Shown here piece after piece: positions 14,910 through 55,839 of a stretch of 64,000 bases of DNA; the stretch's first letter is position 1; every line of letters begins with the position of its first letter. The notes below the pieces were generated by a model. It was given only the letters and a program-made list of their open reading frames with translations, was not told the origin of the DNA and searched no databases. The position numbers and the translations under genes are program-made. Origin of the DNA: Ranitomeya imitator (Eukaryota). The stretch is from positions 167,586,001 through 167,650,000 of the forward strand of contig NC_091283.1 in NCBI RefSeq assembly GCF_032444005.1, given 5' to 3'.

Positions 14910-27753
<12,844 letters not shown>

Positions 27754-27956
27754 GGATGCTTTTCTCCAGGAGAATCCATGTCTTTCAGCTTTGTACAGTT
27801 TCCCTTGCTCAGTGTGATGTGTTGTGTATGAAATAAAGTGTTGTAAAAACGTGAGCCTCTGAGTGACTAATGCGGACAAGATGGATGATTTCAGCTAGCG
27901 TCAGTGTGTCAAGTTTAGGGTATCGCTGTTGTATTGAGCCACCCATGGGAGACCAC

Positions 27957-30522: not shown

Positions 30523-32103
<1,581 letters not shown>

Positions 32104-32605: not shown

Positions 32606-33502
32606 TCAGTCTTCGGGCTCATACTTGCCCAATCTCCGGCGCAGCTCCTTGATCTGCTCGTTCTTGCGGCTCAGGATGTCCTTCATGTTGCGGTAGGCCG
32701 CGGTCTCCTGGAACTTCTTGTCCAGCTCCTTCTCCGCCATCAGCAGCTGCTCATTGACTCGCAGCAGCTCGTGCTTGGTCGTGGTCAGGTTCTCCTCCAG
32801 ACCCCTCTGGTTGGCTGTGTGGTCGCCCAGGGTCTTCTGGAACTCCAGCCTGAGGCTGGCCATGGTGTCCTCCAGGTGGCGGGGGTCCTCCAGGTGGCGG
32901 GGGTCCTCCAGGGAGTTGTGCTGGGCCTGGTCCTGCAGGTCTTGGAGGGCCCGCTCGGCGCTGCGCTTGTGGTCCAGGGCGGTGGTGGCCTGGCTCTCCA
33001 GGGTGCGCAGTCTGGCGCGTAGCTTGTCGTTCTCCTCCTGCAGTCGGCCGATCTGATTGTGGAGGAGGTCTGCGGAGCCGCCATCGCTCAGGGGGGCCAG
33101 TCTGGGCTTGCTGCTCTGGGGGCCCTTGGCTGAGGGCCCCAGCTCCTGGCTCTTCTCCAGCTCGGCCACCTGCTCCAGCAGCTGGCGGTTCTCCAGCTCG
33201 GAGATGTCGGTGTGCAGCCGCAAGTGCCAGTGCTGGGCCTGGGAGAAGAGCTGCTGCAGCAGCAGCACATTGGTGTGCGCAGAGTTGATGAGCTCCAGCT
33301 CCAGCTCGCTCAGCACCACCGCCTGCAGGCCGCTCAGCAGCTCGGACACCTCCTCCGCCGTGTACGTGTCCTCCACCAGCCGGCTCTCCCGCACGTCCTG
33401 GAAGCAGGACGCCACACTCTTCAGCCGCAGCAGCCGCTTACACTGCGCGAACCGCATGTAGCTGAGAACCTCTCCGCGGTGGTGCTCACCCAGCTCCGCC
33501 AT
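32606..33502 (-). CDS. LZTFL1: Leucine zipper transcription factor-like 1 (BBS17) homolog, single exon, 298 aa
   Basis: Uninterrupted ORF MAELGEHH..YMRF..SCFQD..SRLVEDT..DISELENR..LQEENDKL..KELDKKFQETAAYRNMKDIL..KYEPED*, collinear with vertebrate LZTFL1 as recalled. No introns, stops or frameshifts. Confidence 0.93.
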   Translation of the reverse strand: MAELGEHHRGEVLSYMRFAQCKRLLRLKSVASCFQDVRESRLVEDTYTAEEVSELLSGLQAVVLSELELELINSAHTNVLLLQQLFSQAQHWHLRLHTDISELENRQLLEQVAELEKSQELGPSAKGPQSSKPRLAPLSDGGSADLLHNQIGRLQEENDKLRARLRTLESQATTALDHKRSAERALQDLQDQAQHNSLEDPRHLEDPRHLEDTMASLRLEFQKTLGDHTANQRGLEENLTTTKHELLRVNEQLLMAEKELDKKFQETAAYRNMKDILSRKNEQIKELRRRLGKYEPED

Positions 33503-33800
33503 CTTCGCCTGCCCCGCAACGTTTCCATAGTTACCTATGCTGTCACTCGCCTTTTATAGAAACTGCTGCCCAAAGTAAAGATGGCGCCTAAAGTTACTAA
33601 TCTGATTGGCTAAGCAGTCACGGTGGGCGTGGATTGGTCTAGCGAGTTGTAAGTCCCGCCCCTTTAAGCGACTCTCTATACAGCTTTTTATTGGTTAACA
33701 TTTGCCAACGGTAAGAGCCTCCGTAATGCTGATTGGTAGATTATGACAAGAGCCCGCCTCTTCCGGTGTTTTCGGAGTCTCCTCTCGGGGCAGAACCAAT
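33503..33800. promoter_or_regulatory. LZTFL1/NDUFB11 bidirectional promoter
   Basis: 298 bp between divergent ATGs. X-box at 33521-33534, YY1-like AAGATGGCG at 33578-33586, ATTGG at 33605, 33633, 33690 and 33732, CCAAT at 33796. Confidence 0.75.
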
Positions 33801-36188
33801 ATGGCGATGCCCTTGTGTCTGCGGGCGCTGAGGCTGTCCGGGGCTACGCGGCTCCTGAGGACGGCCCCGGTATACAGACTTCATACTGGTCCTCGGGCTG
33901 AGGCCACAACCCCGGTCACGGTCAGTCATGGCAGCCAGTCCAAACACGAGCACGACGACCATGACGAGTTCAATATGTACGACAAGGTAACGTCGCTGCG
34001 CCCCCTACTGGTGGTCATAGGGAGTCATAGTAGTGACCAATCAGATTTCAGCTTTCATCTGTATCGCCCAACCTGAGAAATCGAAGCTGAAATGTGATTG
34101 GTGGCTGCTGGGATAGCGCCTCCTTGTGTCAGTGTGTGGTATTATGGATGAGGCTGGGAGTGAGGCGCCTGCAGGAGTATTACAGGATCATGGCTGTTCA
34201 CATCTCACAGTGCCACAATATCGACGTTTGTTACAAGAAGTGGAAATATGTCCATAGAATATGTTTAAATACTCTTCAATGGGAGAAAAAAAAGCCCAAG
34301 CCGCCACGTCCTTAAAATGCTACACAGCAAGGACAAAAATGTCCCCATCAATAAGGGGTGGTCAGGTAGTGGAAAATTCCTTCCAGGGGTTAAAATGTGT
34401 CCACTAATAAATGTCCTGAGGGTCATTCACATGTCCTGTTATTTCCGGTACCGGAGATGACCATGTGTTTCATACATGTGGCAACTGTGTGACGCATACG
34501 TTTAGCACATGTACCAGCGCCTGAGAAAAGCCCACAGTTTCCACTGACAATCAATGATACTGTTTGCGCTGTTCCCCGGCGCCGGGTGCTGAAGACCGCT
34601 CAGATCATTGTCGCCTGCTCTCCCTACAATCTGCGCTAGCAGGGGATGATGTTGAGTTGTAGTCAAGTGTAAGAATAAAATAAAAAAAAAATCACATTAT
34701 ACTCACTTTAACACCTAATCCTTTGAAGCCAATGTCCTCTGTAAAATAAAAAATTACCCATATCCCTCACCTGTCCGAAGTTGAAAGAATCCACAGTGTT
34801 CACGCGAACATTTGTTCATCAGCATGAGTGGTAGCCAGAGTCAACTGCTCACGCTGAGGAGGATGATTTGCTGCAGTAAGTGTGGACCTCATGGTGAACT
34901 GTGATGATTTCACTGAGGTCACCGCTACCACAATGAGAAAGTCTCACGGTGCAGCTCTGAGTTCACCGTGAGATATTCTCACTGAGGTCACTGCAGTTCA
35001 GCAGCCCAGCTGGGAACTCAGCCTCAGTGACCTGCGGTAACCTCAATGACATCACAGCTGCTCACTAATGCTGCACTCGCAGCATCTTGTTCACCAGTAG
35101 TTTTCCGCCTGGACAGTCGCATCTTGGCACCGTCCAGGTTGAAAATCATTTATCGCAGACATGGATTACAGCGTGGGACAGAACGACTGACAGGTGAGGG
35201 GTATTGTTGTTTTTTTATTTGTTTGAAGGACAATGGCTTCAGAGAATTAGGTGTCGAGTTGAGATGTGACTATTTTATTTCTTTTTTTCTTAATGTTACA
35301 CTTGAATATACCTCTCATCATTCTCCCCTGCTAGCGCTGATCGCAGGGGAGAATGATGAGAGCCGTCTTCAGCACCCGGCGCCGGGGAACAGCAGTAACA
35401 GTACCACTGATTTCCAGGCGCTGGTTTGTGTTACACTGATGACATCAATGTGCATGTATGCGGGACACTTTGCGGCTCATGCTGCTGTTTAAAAACGGGC
35501 GTGTCAGCGTGTTCTGCCCACAGACACACAGTCAGTGGAAACACTGCCATGTGCACAGACCCATTCACTTGAGTGGATCTACATGTGTAAGTGTCTCCGG
35601 AACGTGAGAAAACTGTCATTATACGTACTGGAGACATGGACATATGGAAGAGGCCTGAGAAACAATTTACGCTGCCATAATAAAGCCTATATGGATCCTA
35701 CAGACGACTGGCCTAGAGGAATCGTGAGAACATTCCTTTTCTGTGCTGCGTATTTGGTCATGTGATCTTTCTTAACCAATTAGCTGAGTATTATTTTACA
35801 TGGCTTTCCTTTAAAGGGATTTTTCGGGACTTAGCCATAGTATAAGGATTATTATAATAAACCTTTGAATCCCTCTATGCTCTAGTGAGGCTAAAAGTGA
35901 TCATAATTTATAAGCCACCTGACCCACTAGGGCAAAATTAATGAGGTCCTAATTTACAAACTGTAATATAGGCCATACAGGCAGATCAAAGATGCATGAC
36001 CTGGAATGAAAATTATAAAATGTTTTCCTCCAGCCACTACGGGGAGCTTAGTATATACAGATTTATACAGCCACTACTAGGGGGCACTAACTTCATATGG
36101 ATTTATGCAGCCACCACTATTGAAAACTCACTACATATGGATTTATACTGTTACCACTAGGAGGAGCTCGCTACAAATAATATTATTA

Positions 36189-39056: not shown

Positions 39057-42000
39057 CATTATGTAGAATTTTTCATTTTTATTTTTTTACACATTTGGAA
39101 TTTTTTTTTTTTTACTTTGTCCCAGGGGGGACATCACAGATCGGTGATCTGACAGTTTGCACAGCACTCTGTCAGATCACCGATCTGACTTGCAGCACTG
39201 CAGGCTTCACAGTGCCTGCTCTAAGCAGGCTCTGTGAAGCCACCTCCCTCCCTGCAGGACCCGGATGCCGCGGCCATCTTGGATCCGGGCCTGGAGCAGG
39301 GAGGGAGGTAGGAGACCCTCGCAGCAACGCGATCACATCGCGTTGCTGTGGGGGGCTCAGGGAAGCCCCCTCCCTGCGCGACGCTTCCCTGCACCGTCGG
39401 CACACCGCGATCATGTTTGATCGTGGTGTTCCGGGGGTTAATGTTGCGGGGACGGTCCGTGACCGCTCCTGGCACATTGTGCCGGATGTCAGCTGCGATA
39501 GGCAGCTGACACCCGGCCGCGCTCCCCCCGTGAGTGCGGCCGATCGCTATGACGTACTATCCCGTCGAGGGTCAGATAGGCCCAGGGCACCTCGATGGGA
39601 TAGTACGTCTAAGGTCAGAGAGGGGTTAAAGTAACACAAGACGACCCTGCTTGTGAGAGCTTACAATCTACAATGAGGTGGGGAAATACAAAGTACAGGT
39701 GTGTATTTACAATGATGTATTTACAATGATGGTCCAGCCATCGTCAGGGAGTGGGGGATAGGTGGAGATAGTCAATGGGCTACACACAAACAAAATAACT
39801 GATTAGGGAACATGATAGGCCGCTCTGAACAAATGTGTTTTGAGGAAGCGCCTAAAACTATGCAAATTGTGGATGGTCCTAATATCTTGGGGTAGAGCAT
39901 TCCAGAGGATTGGTGCAGCACGGGAGAAGTCTTGGAGTCGGGAGTGGGAGGTACGGATTAGTGCAGAGGTTAGTCGAAAGTCATTTGCAGAGCGCAGCAG
40001 TCGGCTAGGCCGATAGACCAAAATGAGGGAGGAGATGTAAGGGGGTGCTACACTCTGGAGAGCTTTGTGGGTGAGAACAAGTACTTTGAATTGTATCCTG
40101 TAATGAATGGGCAGCCAGTGTAATGACTGGCGAAGAGCGGACGCGTCCAAGTAACGATTAGCCAGATGGACAACCCTGACTGCCGCATTAAGGATGGACT
40201 GGAGAGGGGAAAGTCGAGTGAGGGGGAGGCCAATTAGTAGAGCATTACAGTAGTCCAGACGGGAGTTGATCAGGGCGACAGTGAGGGTTTTTGTTGTGTT
40301 CATGGTGAGAAAAGGGCGGATTCTAGAGATGTTCTTTAGGTGTAAGCGGCAGGAGCGGGCAAGAGATTGTATATGGGATGTGAAGGAGAGATCGGAGTCA
40401 AACATAACACCCAGACAGCGCGCCTGCTGCCGCGGTTTTATTATGGTGCCACCCACGGAGAGGGAAATGTCAGATTTAGGGAGGTTAGTAGATGGCGGGA
40501 GCAGAAGAAGTTCAGTTTTGGAGAGGTTGAGTTTCAGAGCAGACATGATGTTGGAGACTGCAGACAGTCAGTGGCGTTCTGTAGTACAGCGGGGGTAAGG
40601 TCAGGGGCTGACGTGTATAGTTGTGTGTCATCAGCATAAAGATGGTACTGAAAGCCAAATCTGCTGATGGTCTGTCCAATTGGGGCTGTGTAGAGGGAGA
40701 AGAGAAGGGGGCCAAGGACTGAGCCCTGAGGTACCCCGACAGCGAGAGGAAGAGGAGATGAAGTGGAGCCAGAGAACAGAACACTGAAGGAGCGGTCAGA
40801 AAGGTAGGAGGAGAACCAGGACAGAGCAGTGCCCTTAATGCCTAGTGACTGGAGCCTAGAGAGTAGGAGAGGGTGGTCAACAGTGTCAAAAGCTGCAGAA
40901 AGGTCGAGAAGAATGAGCAGAGAGTGGTCACCGTTACATTTTGCTGTCAGAAGGTCATTGGTCACTTTGATGAGTGCAGTTTCTGTCGAATGTAGGGGGC
41001 GGAAACCGGACTGTGAAGGGTCTAGGAGGGAGTGAATGGAGAGGTAACGGGTAAGGCGGGAGTAGATCAGGCGCTCCAAGAGTTTAGAGATGAAGGGGAG
41101 ATTGGAGACTGGTCTGTAGTTGTTTGTGCAGGATGGGTCGAGGGTGGGTTTCTTTAGTAACGGAGTAATGATAGAGTGTTTGAAGGAGGACGGGAAAATG
41201 CCTGAGGAGAGTGAGAGATTAAAGATTGTAGTTAGGTGAGTAGTGACGACTGGAGAGAGAGACTGGAGGAGATGAGAGGGAATGGGGTCGGTAGAGTATG
41301 TAGTCGGACGAGAAGAAGAGAGGAGCCTGGAGACTTCTTCTGTGATAGGATCGAATATGGAGAGTGAGCCAGGGGAAATGCAGGGAGGGATGGGAGTCAC
41401 TGAACTTGGTGATTGGGAGTGGATTTCCTGACGGATATTGTCTATTTACTGTATAAAGTGGGAAGCCAGGTCATCAGCACAAATGTCTGTGATAGGGTCT
41501 TGAGCTTTTGGCCTGAGGAGGGAGTGAAAGGTGTCAAAAAGTTTCTTGGGGTTATTGGATAGTGAGGAGATCAGGATGGTGAAGTAGGTCTGTTTGGCGA
41601 GGTGAAGGGAAGAGTTATAGGTGCTTAACATAAATTTGAAGTGTATGAAGTCTTCTGGTGTGTGAATTTTCCTCCATAAGCGTTCAGCACACCTAGAGCA
41701 TCACTGGAGAAATCGGGTTTGCGAGGTGAGCCAAGGCTGTTTTACTCTGTGTTTGGGGGTTCTGAGGGTGAGGGGAGCTACTTGGTCTAGGGTGCTTCCA
41801 AGAGTGTCATTGAGGTGATGTACGGCCAGATCAGGACAGGAAAAAGAAGAGATTGGGGACAATGATGAGTGTAAGGAGTCTGAAAGTGTATGAGGGCTAA
41901 TGGCATGTAGATTTCTGACTGAATGGTAGGTAGGAGGGTGCTGGGGTGAGCAAGGATTTGTGAGTGTGAAAGAGAGAATGTTGTGGTCAGAGAGGGGAAG

Positions 42001-54605: not shown

Positions 54606-55839
54606 TCGCACTCCTGTCCCTCTGCCGATTCAATAAAGTATGTGTCACCTCCAGTCTGCTGTTTCTTTTAGAGACCACCAATATGGCTCCTGTTGGAGGG
54701 GTCATCTGGTTTTCCTGGTGTTTGCGCTTTCCTGTTTCACACTTTTTTCCTCTTTGCCTGTTTTTGAAGCCATGAAACAACTCCATTGATCGCGGTCTGA
54801 TGCGGTAATTGGCGTCCTGCTCGGCTTCTAATAGTCATGACCGGACGCCACCTCATTACCTGCGGAGACGGCATGGCCCAATGATGGATGGAGAGCCGTG
54901 CGCTGCGGGGGCTGGCACATGATACATCAGCCGCAGATAATAGAGGGATTAGAGCGGCCCCTCGGCCTGTGCTCAGCGGGGGCACAGCTATGGCCTGGGC
55001 GCAAGATCAGTCGACAATTCCTCTAAGTGCAGCGTCCTATGTGTAGACTGTAGCTACTCGGGAGTGTGGAGATGATGGAGGGCGATGACGGGTGACTGAG
55101 CCCTGACTGCTGGGTCACCGCTCCGTCAGACACCTGCTGGGACTACTCCCCTCCACCATCAGCACCGTGCCAGCTTCTAGCTATATCATAATCTACAATG
55201 CATTGCTGGAACTTGTAGTTCTGGGCCAGAATTTAACTAAAGCAAACCATTTGGGCCTAGTTGTTGTAGACCCACAAGTCTCAGCAGGTTTCCATAGGTC
55301 AGTGTGAATGCTGTGTCCTTGGTGACGCTGGGAGTAGTAGTTATGTAAGAGCCAGGTGGTTTTCCCCTGTTATATAATGTGATCTGCACCTTTCTCTGCA
55401 GCTGGAAGGACATTGCATAAGTGGTCACGTCCTTCAAGCAGGAGGCTGGCGAGGAAAGGGTTACTGAGCTGCGGGGATTTGGGTTTAAATCTGCGGGTTA
55501 AACTGGCTAAGAGCTGGTGTAATCCAGGCAGGAGGGGGCTGCGGCTGCAGAAGTCTCAGCACCATGCCTCCTACTCCCTCACCACACCTGACCATGACCT
55601 CAGCCCACCCTGCCGCTGGGTGCTGCCCGGCCCTGACCCGGGGGGTGGCTCTGCTCTGTAGGATGTGGCTGCATCAAATTCTCAAGGACGAGCGCGGTGA
55701 CGGGTGCTGGACTGGGGAGATGGTCGGGGTGTTACCATGGGAACGTTGCTAACCATTCTGCAGCTCCACAGTACTTAACCCCTCCCATGCCAGACATGAT
55801 TAGCGCAGCACCCAAACATTGCTGCTCCCAACAGCTGTG

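What the first reader, a model, noticed from the sequence alone, without database searches (positions are those of the whole stretch)
32606..33800. Intact intronless LZTFL1 (BBS17) sharing a 298-bp bidirectional promoter with NDUFB11
Seen: a complete 298-codon single-exon ORF, clearly diverged from recalled LZTFL1 yet without disablements, starting 298 bp from the NDUFB11 ATG across a CCAAT/YY1-rich promoter. Recalled: vertebrate LZTFL1 is multi-exon at 3p21, and mammalian NDUFB11 is head-to-head with RBM10. Inference: a retrocopy captured a housekeeping mitochondrial promoter and became a functional retrogene, either a second BBSome-trafficking regulator or a replacement for the parent. This would couple a ciliary gene to a complex I subunit.
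Basis: partly seen in the sequence, partly recalled or inferred. Interest (0 to 1): 0.8.

Follow-up and report, generated by a model that had tools for sequence, protein, structure and literature searches.

The report
Frog LZTFL1 orphan retrogene beside NDUFB11
In this poison frog the cilium-trafficking gene LZTFL1 (BBS17) is an intact, intron-free copy made from its own mRNA; the same copy appears to be the only LZTFL1 of all sampled "modern" frogs, and in the hyloid branch it sits head-to-head with the mitochondrial gene NDUFB11 while keeping its own ciliary (RFX) control motif.

Summary
Window 32606-33502 (-) is an uninterrupted 298-codon ORF and a full-length Pfam Leu_zip/LZTFL1 match (E 1.7e-105). 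Its ATG lies 298 bp from the ATG of NDUFB11 exon 1 (33801, +).

It is a retrogene: Spea and Pelobates keep a multi-exon gene of 28-98 kb. It is selectively maintained, with codon-model omega 0.066. It is old, not a recent poison-frog or hyloid novelty. Eighteen neobatrachian LZTFL1 proteins form one clade on a very long stem of 0.65 substitutions per site. No parent-type protein was found in any neobatrachian proteome, so it looks like an orphan retrogene that replaced its parent.

NDUFB11 adjacency is seen only in hyloids (Ranitomeya, Anomaloglossus, Hyla, Eleutherodactylus, one unnamed hyloid). It is absent in Rana, Mantella and Mixophyes, so the shared promoter is not what made the gene viable.

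An RFX X-box sits 7-18 nt upstream of the ATG in all three neobatrachian lineages. One also lies 53-66 nt upstream in the multi-exon Spea gene, so the motif was probably inherited.

GC3 is 0.90-0.94, against 0.42-0.51 in parent-type genes.

This is a new member of a known kind. The scan noted similar intronless replacements (MARCHF6, UHRF1) elsewhere in this genome.

The parts
32606..33502 (-). LZTFL1 (BBS17) retrogene, single-exon CDS of 298 codons plus stop; GC3 0.92
32873..32908 (-). 18-bp tandem duplication (two copies, encoding LEDPRH twice) with C5 runs. This is where the other R. imitator assembly reads a frameshift.
33503..33800 (.). 298-bp divergent (bidirectional-type) promoter region between the LZTFL1 and NDUFB11 ATGs, conserved in three hyloid lineages; CpG o/e 0.90
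33521..33534 (-). RFX X-box GTAACTATGGAAAC, 18 nt upstream of the LZTFL1 ATG. Orthologous motifs occur in the unnamed hyloid, E. coqui, Mixophyes and Mantella.
33552..33558 (-). TATAAAA box about 50 nt upstream of the LZTFL1 ATG, present in Ranitomeya and the unnamed hyloid but not in E. coqui
33578..33586 (+). YY1-type core AAGATGGCG inside an invariant GCGCCATCTTTAC block. A second copy overlaps the LZTFL1 start codon at 33497-33505.
33605..33736 (-). four CCAAT boxes (at 33605, 33633, 33690, 33732, all oriented on the minus strand) plus a GGGGCGG at 33655-33661. A fifth CCAAT lies at 33796 (+).
33801..33986 (+). NDUFB11 (complex I ESSS subunit) exon 1, with a 5' splice site after YDK
51291..51419 (+). 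NDUFB11 exon 2 (Pfam ESSS, E 8.8e-15). Intron 1 is about 17.3 kb and holds N runs and a 40-bp satellite.
26738..27763 (+). 3' exons of the PQBP1-like gene (WW-domain exon 26738-26854, last exon about 27556-27763), tail-to-tail with LZTFL1. The order is the same in E. coqui, Hyla and Anomaloglossus. The name rests on my reading of the WW-type peptide, on an earlier scan note and on position; Pfam did not confirm the WW exon.
30869..31898 (+). Tc1/mariner-like transposase ORFs in the 3' flank of LZTFL1. The identification comes from reading the ORF translations and a TIR-like end near 32100, not from a family search. The element inserted after the gene arrived and is not part of the gene.

Best explanation
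The ORF is the frog's working LZTFL1 gene, and it is an ancient 'orphan' retrogene. I infer the following history. In the stem lineage of Neobatrachia, after the split from Pelobatoidea, a spliced LZTFL1 mRNA was reverse-transcribed and inserted. The copy stayed expressed, the ~10-exon parent was lost, and the copy took over the role of BBS9-binding regulator of BBSome traffic. Before ranoids and hyloids diverged it underwent a burst of change: GC3 rose to about 0.9 and amino-acid content moved from FYMINK-type toward GARP-type residues. It has evolved under strong purifying selection since. Its proximal control element is an RFX X-box just upstream of the ATG. The motif was probably carried over from the parent, whose X-box lies near its own transcription start. 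In hyloid frogs the gene lies between the 3' end of PQBP1 and the 5' end of NDUFB11. There its ATG is about 250-320 bp from the NDUFB11 ATG, and a conserved CCAAT/YY1/Sp1/ETS-rich spacer probably supplies basal, divergent transcription while the X-box adds ciliary input. Shown: gene structure, family membership, distribution, selection, composition, motif conservation. Inferred: retroposition as the mechanism, parent loss, promoter sharing, RFX control, BBS9 binding.
For: Identity: full-length Leu_zip match, E 1.7e-105. Intronless in Ranitomeya, Anomaloglossus (894 bp), Hyla, E. coqui, Rana, Mantella and Mixophyes. Multi-exon in Pelobates (97.6 kb) and Spea (10 coding exons over 28.5 kb). Single origin: the 18 neobatrachian proteins form one clade (100/100) on a 0.65 subs/site stem, against 0.01-0.09 for the other inner branches outside that clade. 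They share a 2-residue N-terminal deletion and 15 fixed differences from parent-type proteins. AU tests do not reject placing the clade with other frogs (p 0.43) or with Pelobatoidea (p 0.35). Parent loss: a Pelobates query returns every archaeobatrachian frog at 76-88% identity and then other vertebrates at 69-78%, but no neobatrachian among the 120 hits listed. Selection: GY+F3X4+G4 omega 0.066 on six retro CDSs; 116 positions are conserved in both types. Composition: GC3 0.90-0.94 against 0.42-0.51, GARP 0.21-0.28 against 0.14-0.15. Hyloid synteny TIMM17B-PQBP1-LZTFL1-NDUFB11. Promoter conservation across three hyloid lineages. X-box in all retro lineages and in the Spea parent promoter. 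Transcription: Logan contig L003 is cDNA-derived, because NDUFB11 exon 1 is joined exactly to exon 2, yet it runs on through the spacer and the whole LZTFL1 ORF.
Against: No poly(A) remnant or target-site duplication was looked for successfully; none is expected after more than 100 My. Parent loss rests on annotated proteomes, not on a whole-genome tblastn of this species. The transcript evidence comes from a related, unnamed hyloid, and could reflect read-through or DNA carry-over. A second R. imitator assembly reads a frameshift at codon 201. Which genomic site is ancestral (the NDUFB11 site or the ranoid/myobatrachid site) is unresolved. The flanks of Mantella and Mixophyes share nothing recognisable with each other or with the window beyond the CDS plus about 25-40 nt of leader. 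The retro clade attaches to caecilians in the free tree, which is probably long-branch attraction.
Confidence: 0.8

Rival explanations
1. Independent retropositions. The hyloid copy beside NDUFB11 and the ranoid/myobatrachid copies elsewhere arose from separate retroposition events of the parental mRNA, each followed by loss of the parent.
For: The genomic contexts differ. There is no NDUFB11 exon 1 within 6.9-10 kb upstream in Mantella or Mixophyes, and no gene within 10 kb in Rana. DNA similarity stops at the CDS plus a short leader.
Against: The 0.65 subs/site burst, the 2-residue deletion, the 15 fixed differences, the extreme GC3 and the X-box-plus-leader arrangement are all shared by hyloid, myobatrachid and ranoid copies. 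Independent copies would have had to acquire all of these in parallel. Otherwise the parent would have had to change first, and no multi-exon frog shows that.
Confidence: 0.08
2. Additional copy, not a replacement. The multi-exon parent persists in neobatrachians but is unannotated or in assembly gaps, so the retrogene is a second, diverged BBSome regulator.
For: I could not run tblastn on whole frog genomes, and large repeat-rich genomes have annotation gaps.
Against: Neobatrachian species from both Hyloidea and Ranoidea contribute retro-type proteins to the database, mostly from NCBI records. None contributes a parent-type protein, while every sampled archaeobatrachian, salamander and caecilian does.
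Confidence: 0.07
3. Not a retrocopy at all. It is either an ancient intronless paralogue (or ohnolog) kept only in neobatrachians, or the result of wholesale in-situ intron loss at the ancestral locus.
For: The free tree does not nest the clade inside frogs. No poly(A) remnant or TSD is visible. The ranoid and myobatrachid sites have no called neighbours that would show they differ from the ancestral locus.
Against: The clade sits inside tetrapods, and frog monophyly is not rejected. No other vertebrate shows a second LZTFL1 lineage among the 120 best hits listed in each of two searches. The hyloid site between PQBP1 and NDUFB11 is clearly not where the multi-exon gene lies: no ESSS gene is called within 10 kb of the Pelobates or Spea gene.
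Confidence: 0.04
4. Decaying in this species. The Ranitomeya copy is becoming a pseudogene, and the intact ORF in the window is one allele or an assembly accident.
For: The other R. imitator assembly gives a 244-aa frameshifted product.
Against: The shift is a single extra C in a C5 run next to an 18-bp repeat, which is a typical assembly error. The first 201 residues are identical. The window ORF is intact and the clade-wide omega is 0.066.
Confidence: 0.03

Closest known systems
Canonical vertebrate LZTFL1/BBS17 (BBS9-binding regulator of BBSome ciliary traffic; Seo et al. 2011, PMC3207910)
   Same: Same family and same length, with a full-length Pfam Leu_zip match. 116 of 298 positions are conserved in both types. 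The C-terminal half, mapped as the BBS9-binding part (aa 145-299 in the paper), has only 2 of the 15 fixed differences.
   Different: It is intronless, against 10 coding exons. It is 56-63% identical to the aligned parent-type proteins, whereas shark and frog parent types are about 74% identical to each other. GC3 is 0.92. A 2-residue N-terminal deletion and 13 fixed changes lie in the N-terminal (regulatory) half. The genomic site is different.
Mammalian orphan retrogenes that replaced their parents (e.g. RNF113A, MARS2, TRMT12; Ciomborowska et al. 2013, PMC3548309; Carelli et al. 2016, PMC4772013)
   Same: Retroposition was followed by loss of the multi-exon parent, with purifying selection afterwards. 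The promoter is rich in unmethylated-type CpG (o/e about 0.9) and rich in Sp1, YY1 and CCAAT sites.
   Different: The clade is different (Neobatrachia). The gene is a ciliopathy gene. There is an unusually large compositional and protein-rate burst, and a tissue-specific motif (X-box) is retained at the new gene.
Retrocopies driven by a neighbour's bidirectional promoter (11 human and 12 mouse cases within 2 kb head-to-head; Carelli et al. 2016, PMC4772013)
   Same: Head-to-head with a housekeeping gene at about 300 bp, with a conserved shared spacer.
   Different: Here the arrangement is not needed for function, because the same retrogene works elsewhere in ranoids and myobatrachids. Co-expression with NDUFB11 is untested.
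Other intronless replacements noted by this scan in the same genome (MARCHF6 in hyloids, UHRF1 in modern frogs; also TIPRL and SRPK1 candidates)
   Same: A single-exon copy that appears to be the only gene, shared across frogs, with GC-enriched silent sites reported for MARCHF6 (AI notes that I did not re-test).
   Different: Different genes and loci. LZTFL1 dates to the neobatrachian stem, whereas the MARCHF6 note speaks of hyloids.

Membership tests
LZTFL1 / Pfam PF15294 Leu_zip | Full-length match to the family profile above the curated cut-off | tested here: met
   352.9 bits against a 28.2 cut-off, profile positions 1-275 of 275. The best database hits are all named LZTFL1.
LZTFL1 / Pfam PF15294 Leu_zip | C-terminal coiled-coil half that binds BBS9 (aa 145-299 in human; PMC3207910) | not testable with these tools
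   The sequence of residues 231-298 is well kept: 33 positions are conserved in both types and there is 1 fixed difference. Binding itself needs a co-IP.
Retrogene (processed, mRNA-derived gene copy) | All parental introns are absent while orthologues in outgroups are multi-exon | tested here: met
   The ORF is continuous. Spea has 10 coding exons over 28.5 kb and Pelobates spans 97.6 kb.
Retrogene (processed, mRNA-derived gene copy) | Located away from the parental locus | tested here: inconclusive
   The hyloid site lies between PQBP1 and NDUFB11. No ESSS gene is called within 10 kb of the multi-exon gene in Pelobates or Spea. The wider neighbourhood of the parent could not be compared.
Retrogene (processed, mRNA-derived gene copy) | Poly(A) tract and target-site duplications | tested here: not met
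   There is no A-rich tract or canonical AATAAA/ATTAAA signal in the 700 nt after the stop codon. No dedicated TSD search was run. Decay of these marks is expected for an insertion older than the ranoid-hyloid split, so this is weak evidence against.
Orphan retrogene (parent lost) | No intact parental gene in the same genomes | tested here: inconclusive
   No parent-type protein from any neobatrachian appears among the 120 hits listed for a parent-type query (69-100% identity). Whole-genome tblastn was not possible.
Orphan retrogene (parent lost) | Purifying selection on the copy | tested here: met
   Omega is 0.066 under GY+F3X4+G4 on six CDSs from five species. NG86 gives 0.29-0.37, but it underestimates dS at GC3 of about 0.9.
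Orphan retrogene (parent lost) | Transcription | tested here: inconclusive
   The cDNA-derived contig L003, from a related hyloid, covers the ORF. There are no data for this species and no strand information.
Bidirectional promoter pair | Head-to-head genes with starts less than 1 kb apart and a conserved spacer | tested here: met
   The ATGs are 298 bp apart here and about 250-320 bp apart in Hyla, Anomaloglossus, E. coqui and the unnamed hyloid. Mean column identity is 79% across three lineages.
Bidirectional promoter pair | Both genes actually initiate from the shared region and are co-regulated | not testable with these tools
   This needs CAGE or RNA-seq. L003 spanning both genes is only suggestive.
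RFX (X-box) regulated ciliary gene | Conserved X-box close to the start site | tested here: met
   GTAACTATGGAAAC lies 18 nt upstream of the ATG. It is invariant apart from one base in three hyloids, with orthologous motifs in Mixophyes and Mantella, and GTCCCCATGACAAC lies 53-66 nt upstream in Spea.
RFX (X-box) regulated ciliary gene | RFX binding and dependence | not testable with these tools
   This needs ChIP or a reporter assay.

The most novel reading that the evidence does not exclude
LZTFL1 is one visible case of a wave of parent-replacing retrogenes in the stem of modern frogs; MARCHF6, UHRF1, TIPRL and SRPK1 were noted elsewhere in this genome. In that reading, replacement succeeded here because the retrocopy carried its own RFX X-box (and perhaps an E-box) in its 5' leader, which made ciliary regulation portable. 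That portability also allowed a later move next to NDUFB11 in hyloids. The extreme GC3, and the GC-driven protein change concentrated in the regulatory N-terminal half, would then result from promoter-centred recombination and biased gene conversion in PRDM9-less amphibians acting on a gene whose whole CDS lies within 1 kb of its start site.
Probability: 0.3. Interest if true: 0.6.

Novelty: new member of a known kind. Interest (0 to 1): 0.42.

Why it matters
A Bardet-Biedl syndrome gene has been swapped for a processed copy in the clade that holds most living frog species. The copy is so changed in composition and sequence that it is less like its frog parent type (about 60% identical) than a shark's gene is (about 74%). 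This has three practical consequences. Neobatrachian 'LZTFL1' should not be treated as a plain one-to-one orthologue in rate, synteny or dN/dS studies. Xenopus, which keeps the multi-exon gene, is not a regulatory model for this gene in other frogs. At least one public model starts at a false ATG inside the X-box (Mixophyes). It also offers a natural experiment on how a retrocopy keeps tissue-specific (RFX) control, and on how far GC-biased processes can push a constrained protein. Together with the other intronless replacements noted in this genome, it hints at a lineage-wide phenomenon worth a systematic count.

Tried and rejected
1. A PDB sequence search with the protein found no hits.
2. 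YN00 pairwise dN/dS failed or was unstable at GC3 of about 0.9, returning nan or dS 1.8. NG86 dS was saturated against parent types. I replaced both with an ML codon model.
3. blastn and tblastx of the Mantella and Mixophyes flanks against each other and against the window found only the CDS plus a short leader, along with TE-like weak hits. The ancestral site could therefore not be determined.
4. tblastn of the NDUFB11 exon 1 peptide against the Mantella and Mixophyes loci found nothing credible.
6. Literature searches for an LZTFL1 retrogene, for frog retrogenes and for an LZTFL1 X-box found no prior description. One search returned one paper, which I did not open.
7. I looked for a GC3 gradient with distance from the promoter in NDUFB11. 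Exon 1 is 0.74 and exon 2 is 0.70, so there is no clear gradient and the biased-conversion idea stays an inference.
8. Pfam on the putative PQBP1 WW exon alone gave no hit. The name 'PQBP1' rests on the motif as read, on the earlier scan note and on position next to the Tim17 gene.
9. I considered an RBM10 remnant between LZTFL1 and PQBP1. No RBM10 search was run. The stretch between the two genes held only Tc1-like ORFs and no called gene in the orthologous loci.
Full report
**Observation.** The window holds an uninterrupted 298-codon ORF at 32606-33502 on the minus strand. It matches Pfam PF15294 (Leu_zip, the LZTFL1 family) end to end at E 1.7e-105. On the plus strand an ORF starting at 33801 codes for a mitochondrial-presequence-like peptide and ends at a 5' splice site (YDK|gtaacg, 33986). 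Its continuation lies at 51291-51419 and hits Pfam ESSS (NDUFB11) at E 8.8e-15. The two ATGs are exactly 298 bp apart. The spacer has 5 CCAAT boxes against 0.68 expected from window density, a GGGCGG and a TATAAAA; the YY1-type core AAGATGGCG occurs once in the spacer and once overlapping the LZTFL1 ATG, 2 of its 3 window occurrences. It also has a strict X-box at 33521-33534.

**Whose genome and whose gene.** The best protein hits are all annotated LZTFL1 from neobatrachian frogs. Anomaloglossus is 88% identical, other hyloids are 80-84%, Mixophyes is 72% and ranoids are 67-73%. Multi-exon vertebrate LZTFL1 proteins are only 59-67% identical. A Ranitomeya imitator entry is 100% identical over residues 1-201, so the window is Ranitomeya imitator or a very close relative.

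**Gene structure across frogs.** Gene tables and DNA from public assemblies show a single-exon gene in seven species:
- Anomaloglossus (894 bp)
- Hyla sarda
- Eleutherodactylus coqui
- Rana temporaria
- Mantella
- Mixophyes
- this window

The gene spans 97.6 kb in Pelobates. In Spea it has 10 coding exons over 28.5 kb, with the ATG alone at the end of exon 1. The intronless state is therefore derived, and it is shared by all sampled Neobatrachia.

**One origin, and replacement of the parent.**
- In a maximum-likelihood tree of 42 proteins, the 18 neobatrachian sequences form one clade (100/100). Its stem is 0.65 substitutions per site, while inner branches outside that clade are 0.01-0.09.
- All of them share a two-residue N-terminal deletion. 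Fifteen positions are at least 90% conserved from sharks to mammals and at least 90% conserved, but with a different residue, in neobatrachians. Thirteen of the fifteen fall in the N-terminal half.
- The free tree attaches the clade to caecilians, which is a likely long-branch effect. AU tests do not reject placing it with the other frogs (p 0.43) or as sister to Pelobatoidea (p 0.35).
- With the Pelobates protein as query, the 120 hits listed are archaeobatrachian frogs (76-88% identical) followed by other vertebrates (69-78%). Not one neobatrachian protein is among them. Many neobatrachian genomes contribute the retro-type protein to the same database.

The simplest reading is a single retroposition in the neobatrachian stem followed by loss of the parent. 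That makes it an 'orphan retrogene' in the sense of Ciomborowska et al. 2013 (PMC3548309) and Carelli et al. 2016 (PMC4772013). Parent loss is inferred from annotation.

**Selection and composition.** An ML codon model (GY+F3X4+G4) on six retro-type CDSs from five species gives omega 0.066. NG86 gives 0.29-0.37, but it underestimates dS when GC3 is about 0.9. GC3 is 0.90-0.94 in Ranitomeya, the unnamed hyloid, E. coqui, Mantella and Mixophyes, against 0.42-0.51 in two parent-type mRNAs. GARP residues rise from about 0.15 to 0.21-0.28, and FYMINK residues fall from about 0.25 to 0.11-0.15. GC3 is uniform along the CDS and higher than in the NDUFB11 exons (0.70-0.74). So the stem burst is at least partly compositional. 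Published work states that amphibians lack PRDM9 (PMC10794172). It therefore seems plausible to me that promoter-centred recombination and GC-biased gene conversion act on a gene lying wholly within 1 kb of its start. This is an inference and I did not test it.

**The NDUFB11 arrangement.** Head-to-head adjacency with the ESSS gene is present in this window, Anomaloglossus, Hyla, E. coqui and an unnamed hyloid (genomic Logan contig L002). The ATGs lie about 250-320 bp apart. The order TIMM17B, PQBP1-like, LZTFL1, NDUFB11 is the same in E. coqui and in the window.

The spacer aligns across three hyloid lineages at 79% mean column identity. The invariant blocks are listed below.
- The X-box with three flanking bases (GTAACCATGGAAACGTT), with one base changed in the window.
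- A GCGCCATCTTTACTT block (YY1 type).
- Four CCAAT boxes.
- GGGGCGG.
- An ETS-like CACCGGAAGAGGCGGG next to NDUFB11.

Adjacency is absent outside hyloids. No gene is called within 10 kb in Rana. No NDUFB11 exon 1 is detectable within 10 kb upstream in Mixophyes or 6.9 kb upstream in Mantella. Similarity to the window stops at the CDS plus about 25-40 nt of leader in those two species. The gene therefore functions without the NDUFB11 promoter in two other lineages. Taking Myobatrachoidea as closer to Hyloidea than Ranoidea is (my own knowledge), the hyloid position would be the derived one if the ranoid and myobatrachid sites are the same. I could not establish that they are.

**The X-box.** Every retro-type locus with DNA has an X-box just upstream of the true ATG.

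| Species | Motif | Spacing to ATG |
|---|---|---|
| Ranitomeya (window) | GTAACTATGGAAAC | 18 nt |
| Unnamed hyloid and E. coqui | GTAACCATGGAAAC | 18 nt |
| Mixophyes | GTGTCCATGGTAAC | 16 nt |
| Mantella | GTGTCCATGGTGAC | 7 nt |

In Mixophyes the annotated start codon is the ATG inside this motif, which adds 8 spurious residues. Mantella and Mixophyes also share a GTCACATGAC E-box-like motif immediately upstream.

The multi-exon Spea gene has a strict X-box (GTCCCCATGACAAC) 53-66 nt upstream of its ATG, preceded by TCATGTGAC. Parent-type mRNA contigs from another vertebrate begin at ...TGGCAAC about 70 nt before the ATG, which looks like an X-box half-site at the transcription start. The strict pattern is expected 0.37 times per 64 kb on both strands, so these placements are not chance. 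I infer that the motif came with the retrocopy, through a transcript initiated slightly upstream. That would explain how a ciliary gene could be replaced by a processed copy.

**Expression.** Logan contig L003, from a hyloid whose protein is 83% identical, joins NDUFB11 exon 1 exactly to exon 2, so it derives from RNA. It then continues through the spacer and the whole LZTFL1 ORF. This suggests that LZTFL1 is transcribed and that the two transcription units overlap or abut. It is unstranded, comes from another species, and could include read-through.

**Caveat on intactness.** A second R. imitator assembly gives a 244-aa product that leaves the frame at residue 201. There the window has two copies of an 18-bp unit (32873-32908). 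The other assembly has one copy and C6 instead of C5. A homopolymer error is the likeliest cause. Read-level data would settle it.

**Comparison with the known.** Functionally this should be LZTFL1, the BBS9-binding regulator of BBSome and Smoothened ciliary traffic (PMC3207910). The BBS9-binding C-terminal half is the better conserved half, and the fixed changes cluster in the N-terminal regulatory half. Mechanistically it belongs with orphan retrogenes, and in hyloids with retrocopies sitting on a neighbour's bidirectional promoter. Both are described classes. I found no paper describing this case. The scan's notes list other intronless replacements in this genome (MARCHF6, UHRF1, TIPRL, SRPK1, not re-tested). 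This suggests a lineage-wide pattern.

**Verdict.** The 'replacement' branch of that idea is favoured. The promoter-capture story is demoted, because the gene is older than the arrangement, or at least independent of it, and brings its own ciliary element. It is a new member of a known kind, of moderate interest.

Noticed in passing
window 43076-44234 (also 35976-36186); L012:1-9280: A 40-bp satellite (29 copies, 90% matches) lies inside NDUFB11 intron 1. E. coqui has kilobases of a related 40-bp array in the same intron. It is either a conserved intronic minisatellite or a widespread hyloid satellite.
   Followed up: partly
window 40001-43000: There is a very strong G-over-C skew (0.38-0.56 per kb) in NDUFB11 intron 1, next to a LINE-like ORF at 39803-40546 (-). 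I did not examine it.
   Followed up: no
window 46670, 47162, 47575 (-) and 55731: Three identical strict X-boxes (GTCGCCATGGCAAC) are spaced about 410-490 bp apart in a repeat next to the N runs. A palindromic X-box (GTTACCATGGGAAC) lies at 55731. Together they account for the window's excess of X-box matches (6 against 0.37 expected).
   Followed up: no
L005:10001-10024 (Mixophyes fleayi, protein P0013): The public gene model starts at the ATG inside the X-box (GTGTCCATGGTAAC). The conserved MAELSE start is 24 nt downstream, so the model carries 8 spurious residues.
   Followed up: yes
L001:6480-6881 (Mantella aurantiaca): The 5' end of the gene (E-box, X-box-like motif, AAGATGGCGGA) appears duplicated about 210 bp upstream. 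Two further X-box-like GTTGCCGGGGAGAC motifs are present.
   Followed up: partly
L005:9600-9990 (Mixophyes): The upstream region is a run of about 8 repeated GACAGCCAATAG units, i.e. a tandem array of CCAAT boxes.
   Followed up: no
window 32873-32908; protein P0012: The other R. imitator assembly has one copy of the 18-bp unit and an extra C, giving a frameshifted 244-aa model. Bufo gargarizans LZTFL1 is flagged 'LOW QUALITY PROTEIN' by NCBI. GC-rich homopolymers in this gene seem error-prone.
   Followed up: partly
window 19300-23097 (+) and 24400-26400 (-): A DIRS-like retroelement, identified from the ORF translations only (reverse-transcriptase-like and tyrosine-recombinase-like ORFs of 692 and 478 aa), and a tandem array of about 170-190-bp units with repeated 77-98-aa ORFs. 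Both lie inside what seems to be a PQBP1 intron.
   Followed up: no
window 27200-27515; L012:14640-16465: A short tandem repeat just upstream of the last PQBP1 exon is shared with, and much expanded in, E. coqui.
   Followed up: no
L012:10844-11260 (E. coqui): The 3' flank of E. coqui LZTFL1 is a tandem array of GAGACCCTCCCCCGAAGACTGA-like units. No 3' UTR similarity to the window is left.
   Followed up: no
proteins P0018-P0020 (Hyaena, Panthera, Lynx): Feliform LZTFL1 proteins are the closest parent-type hits to the frog retrogene (67%, against 63-65% for other mammals). This may be a compositional coincidence.
   Followed up: no
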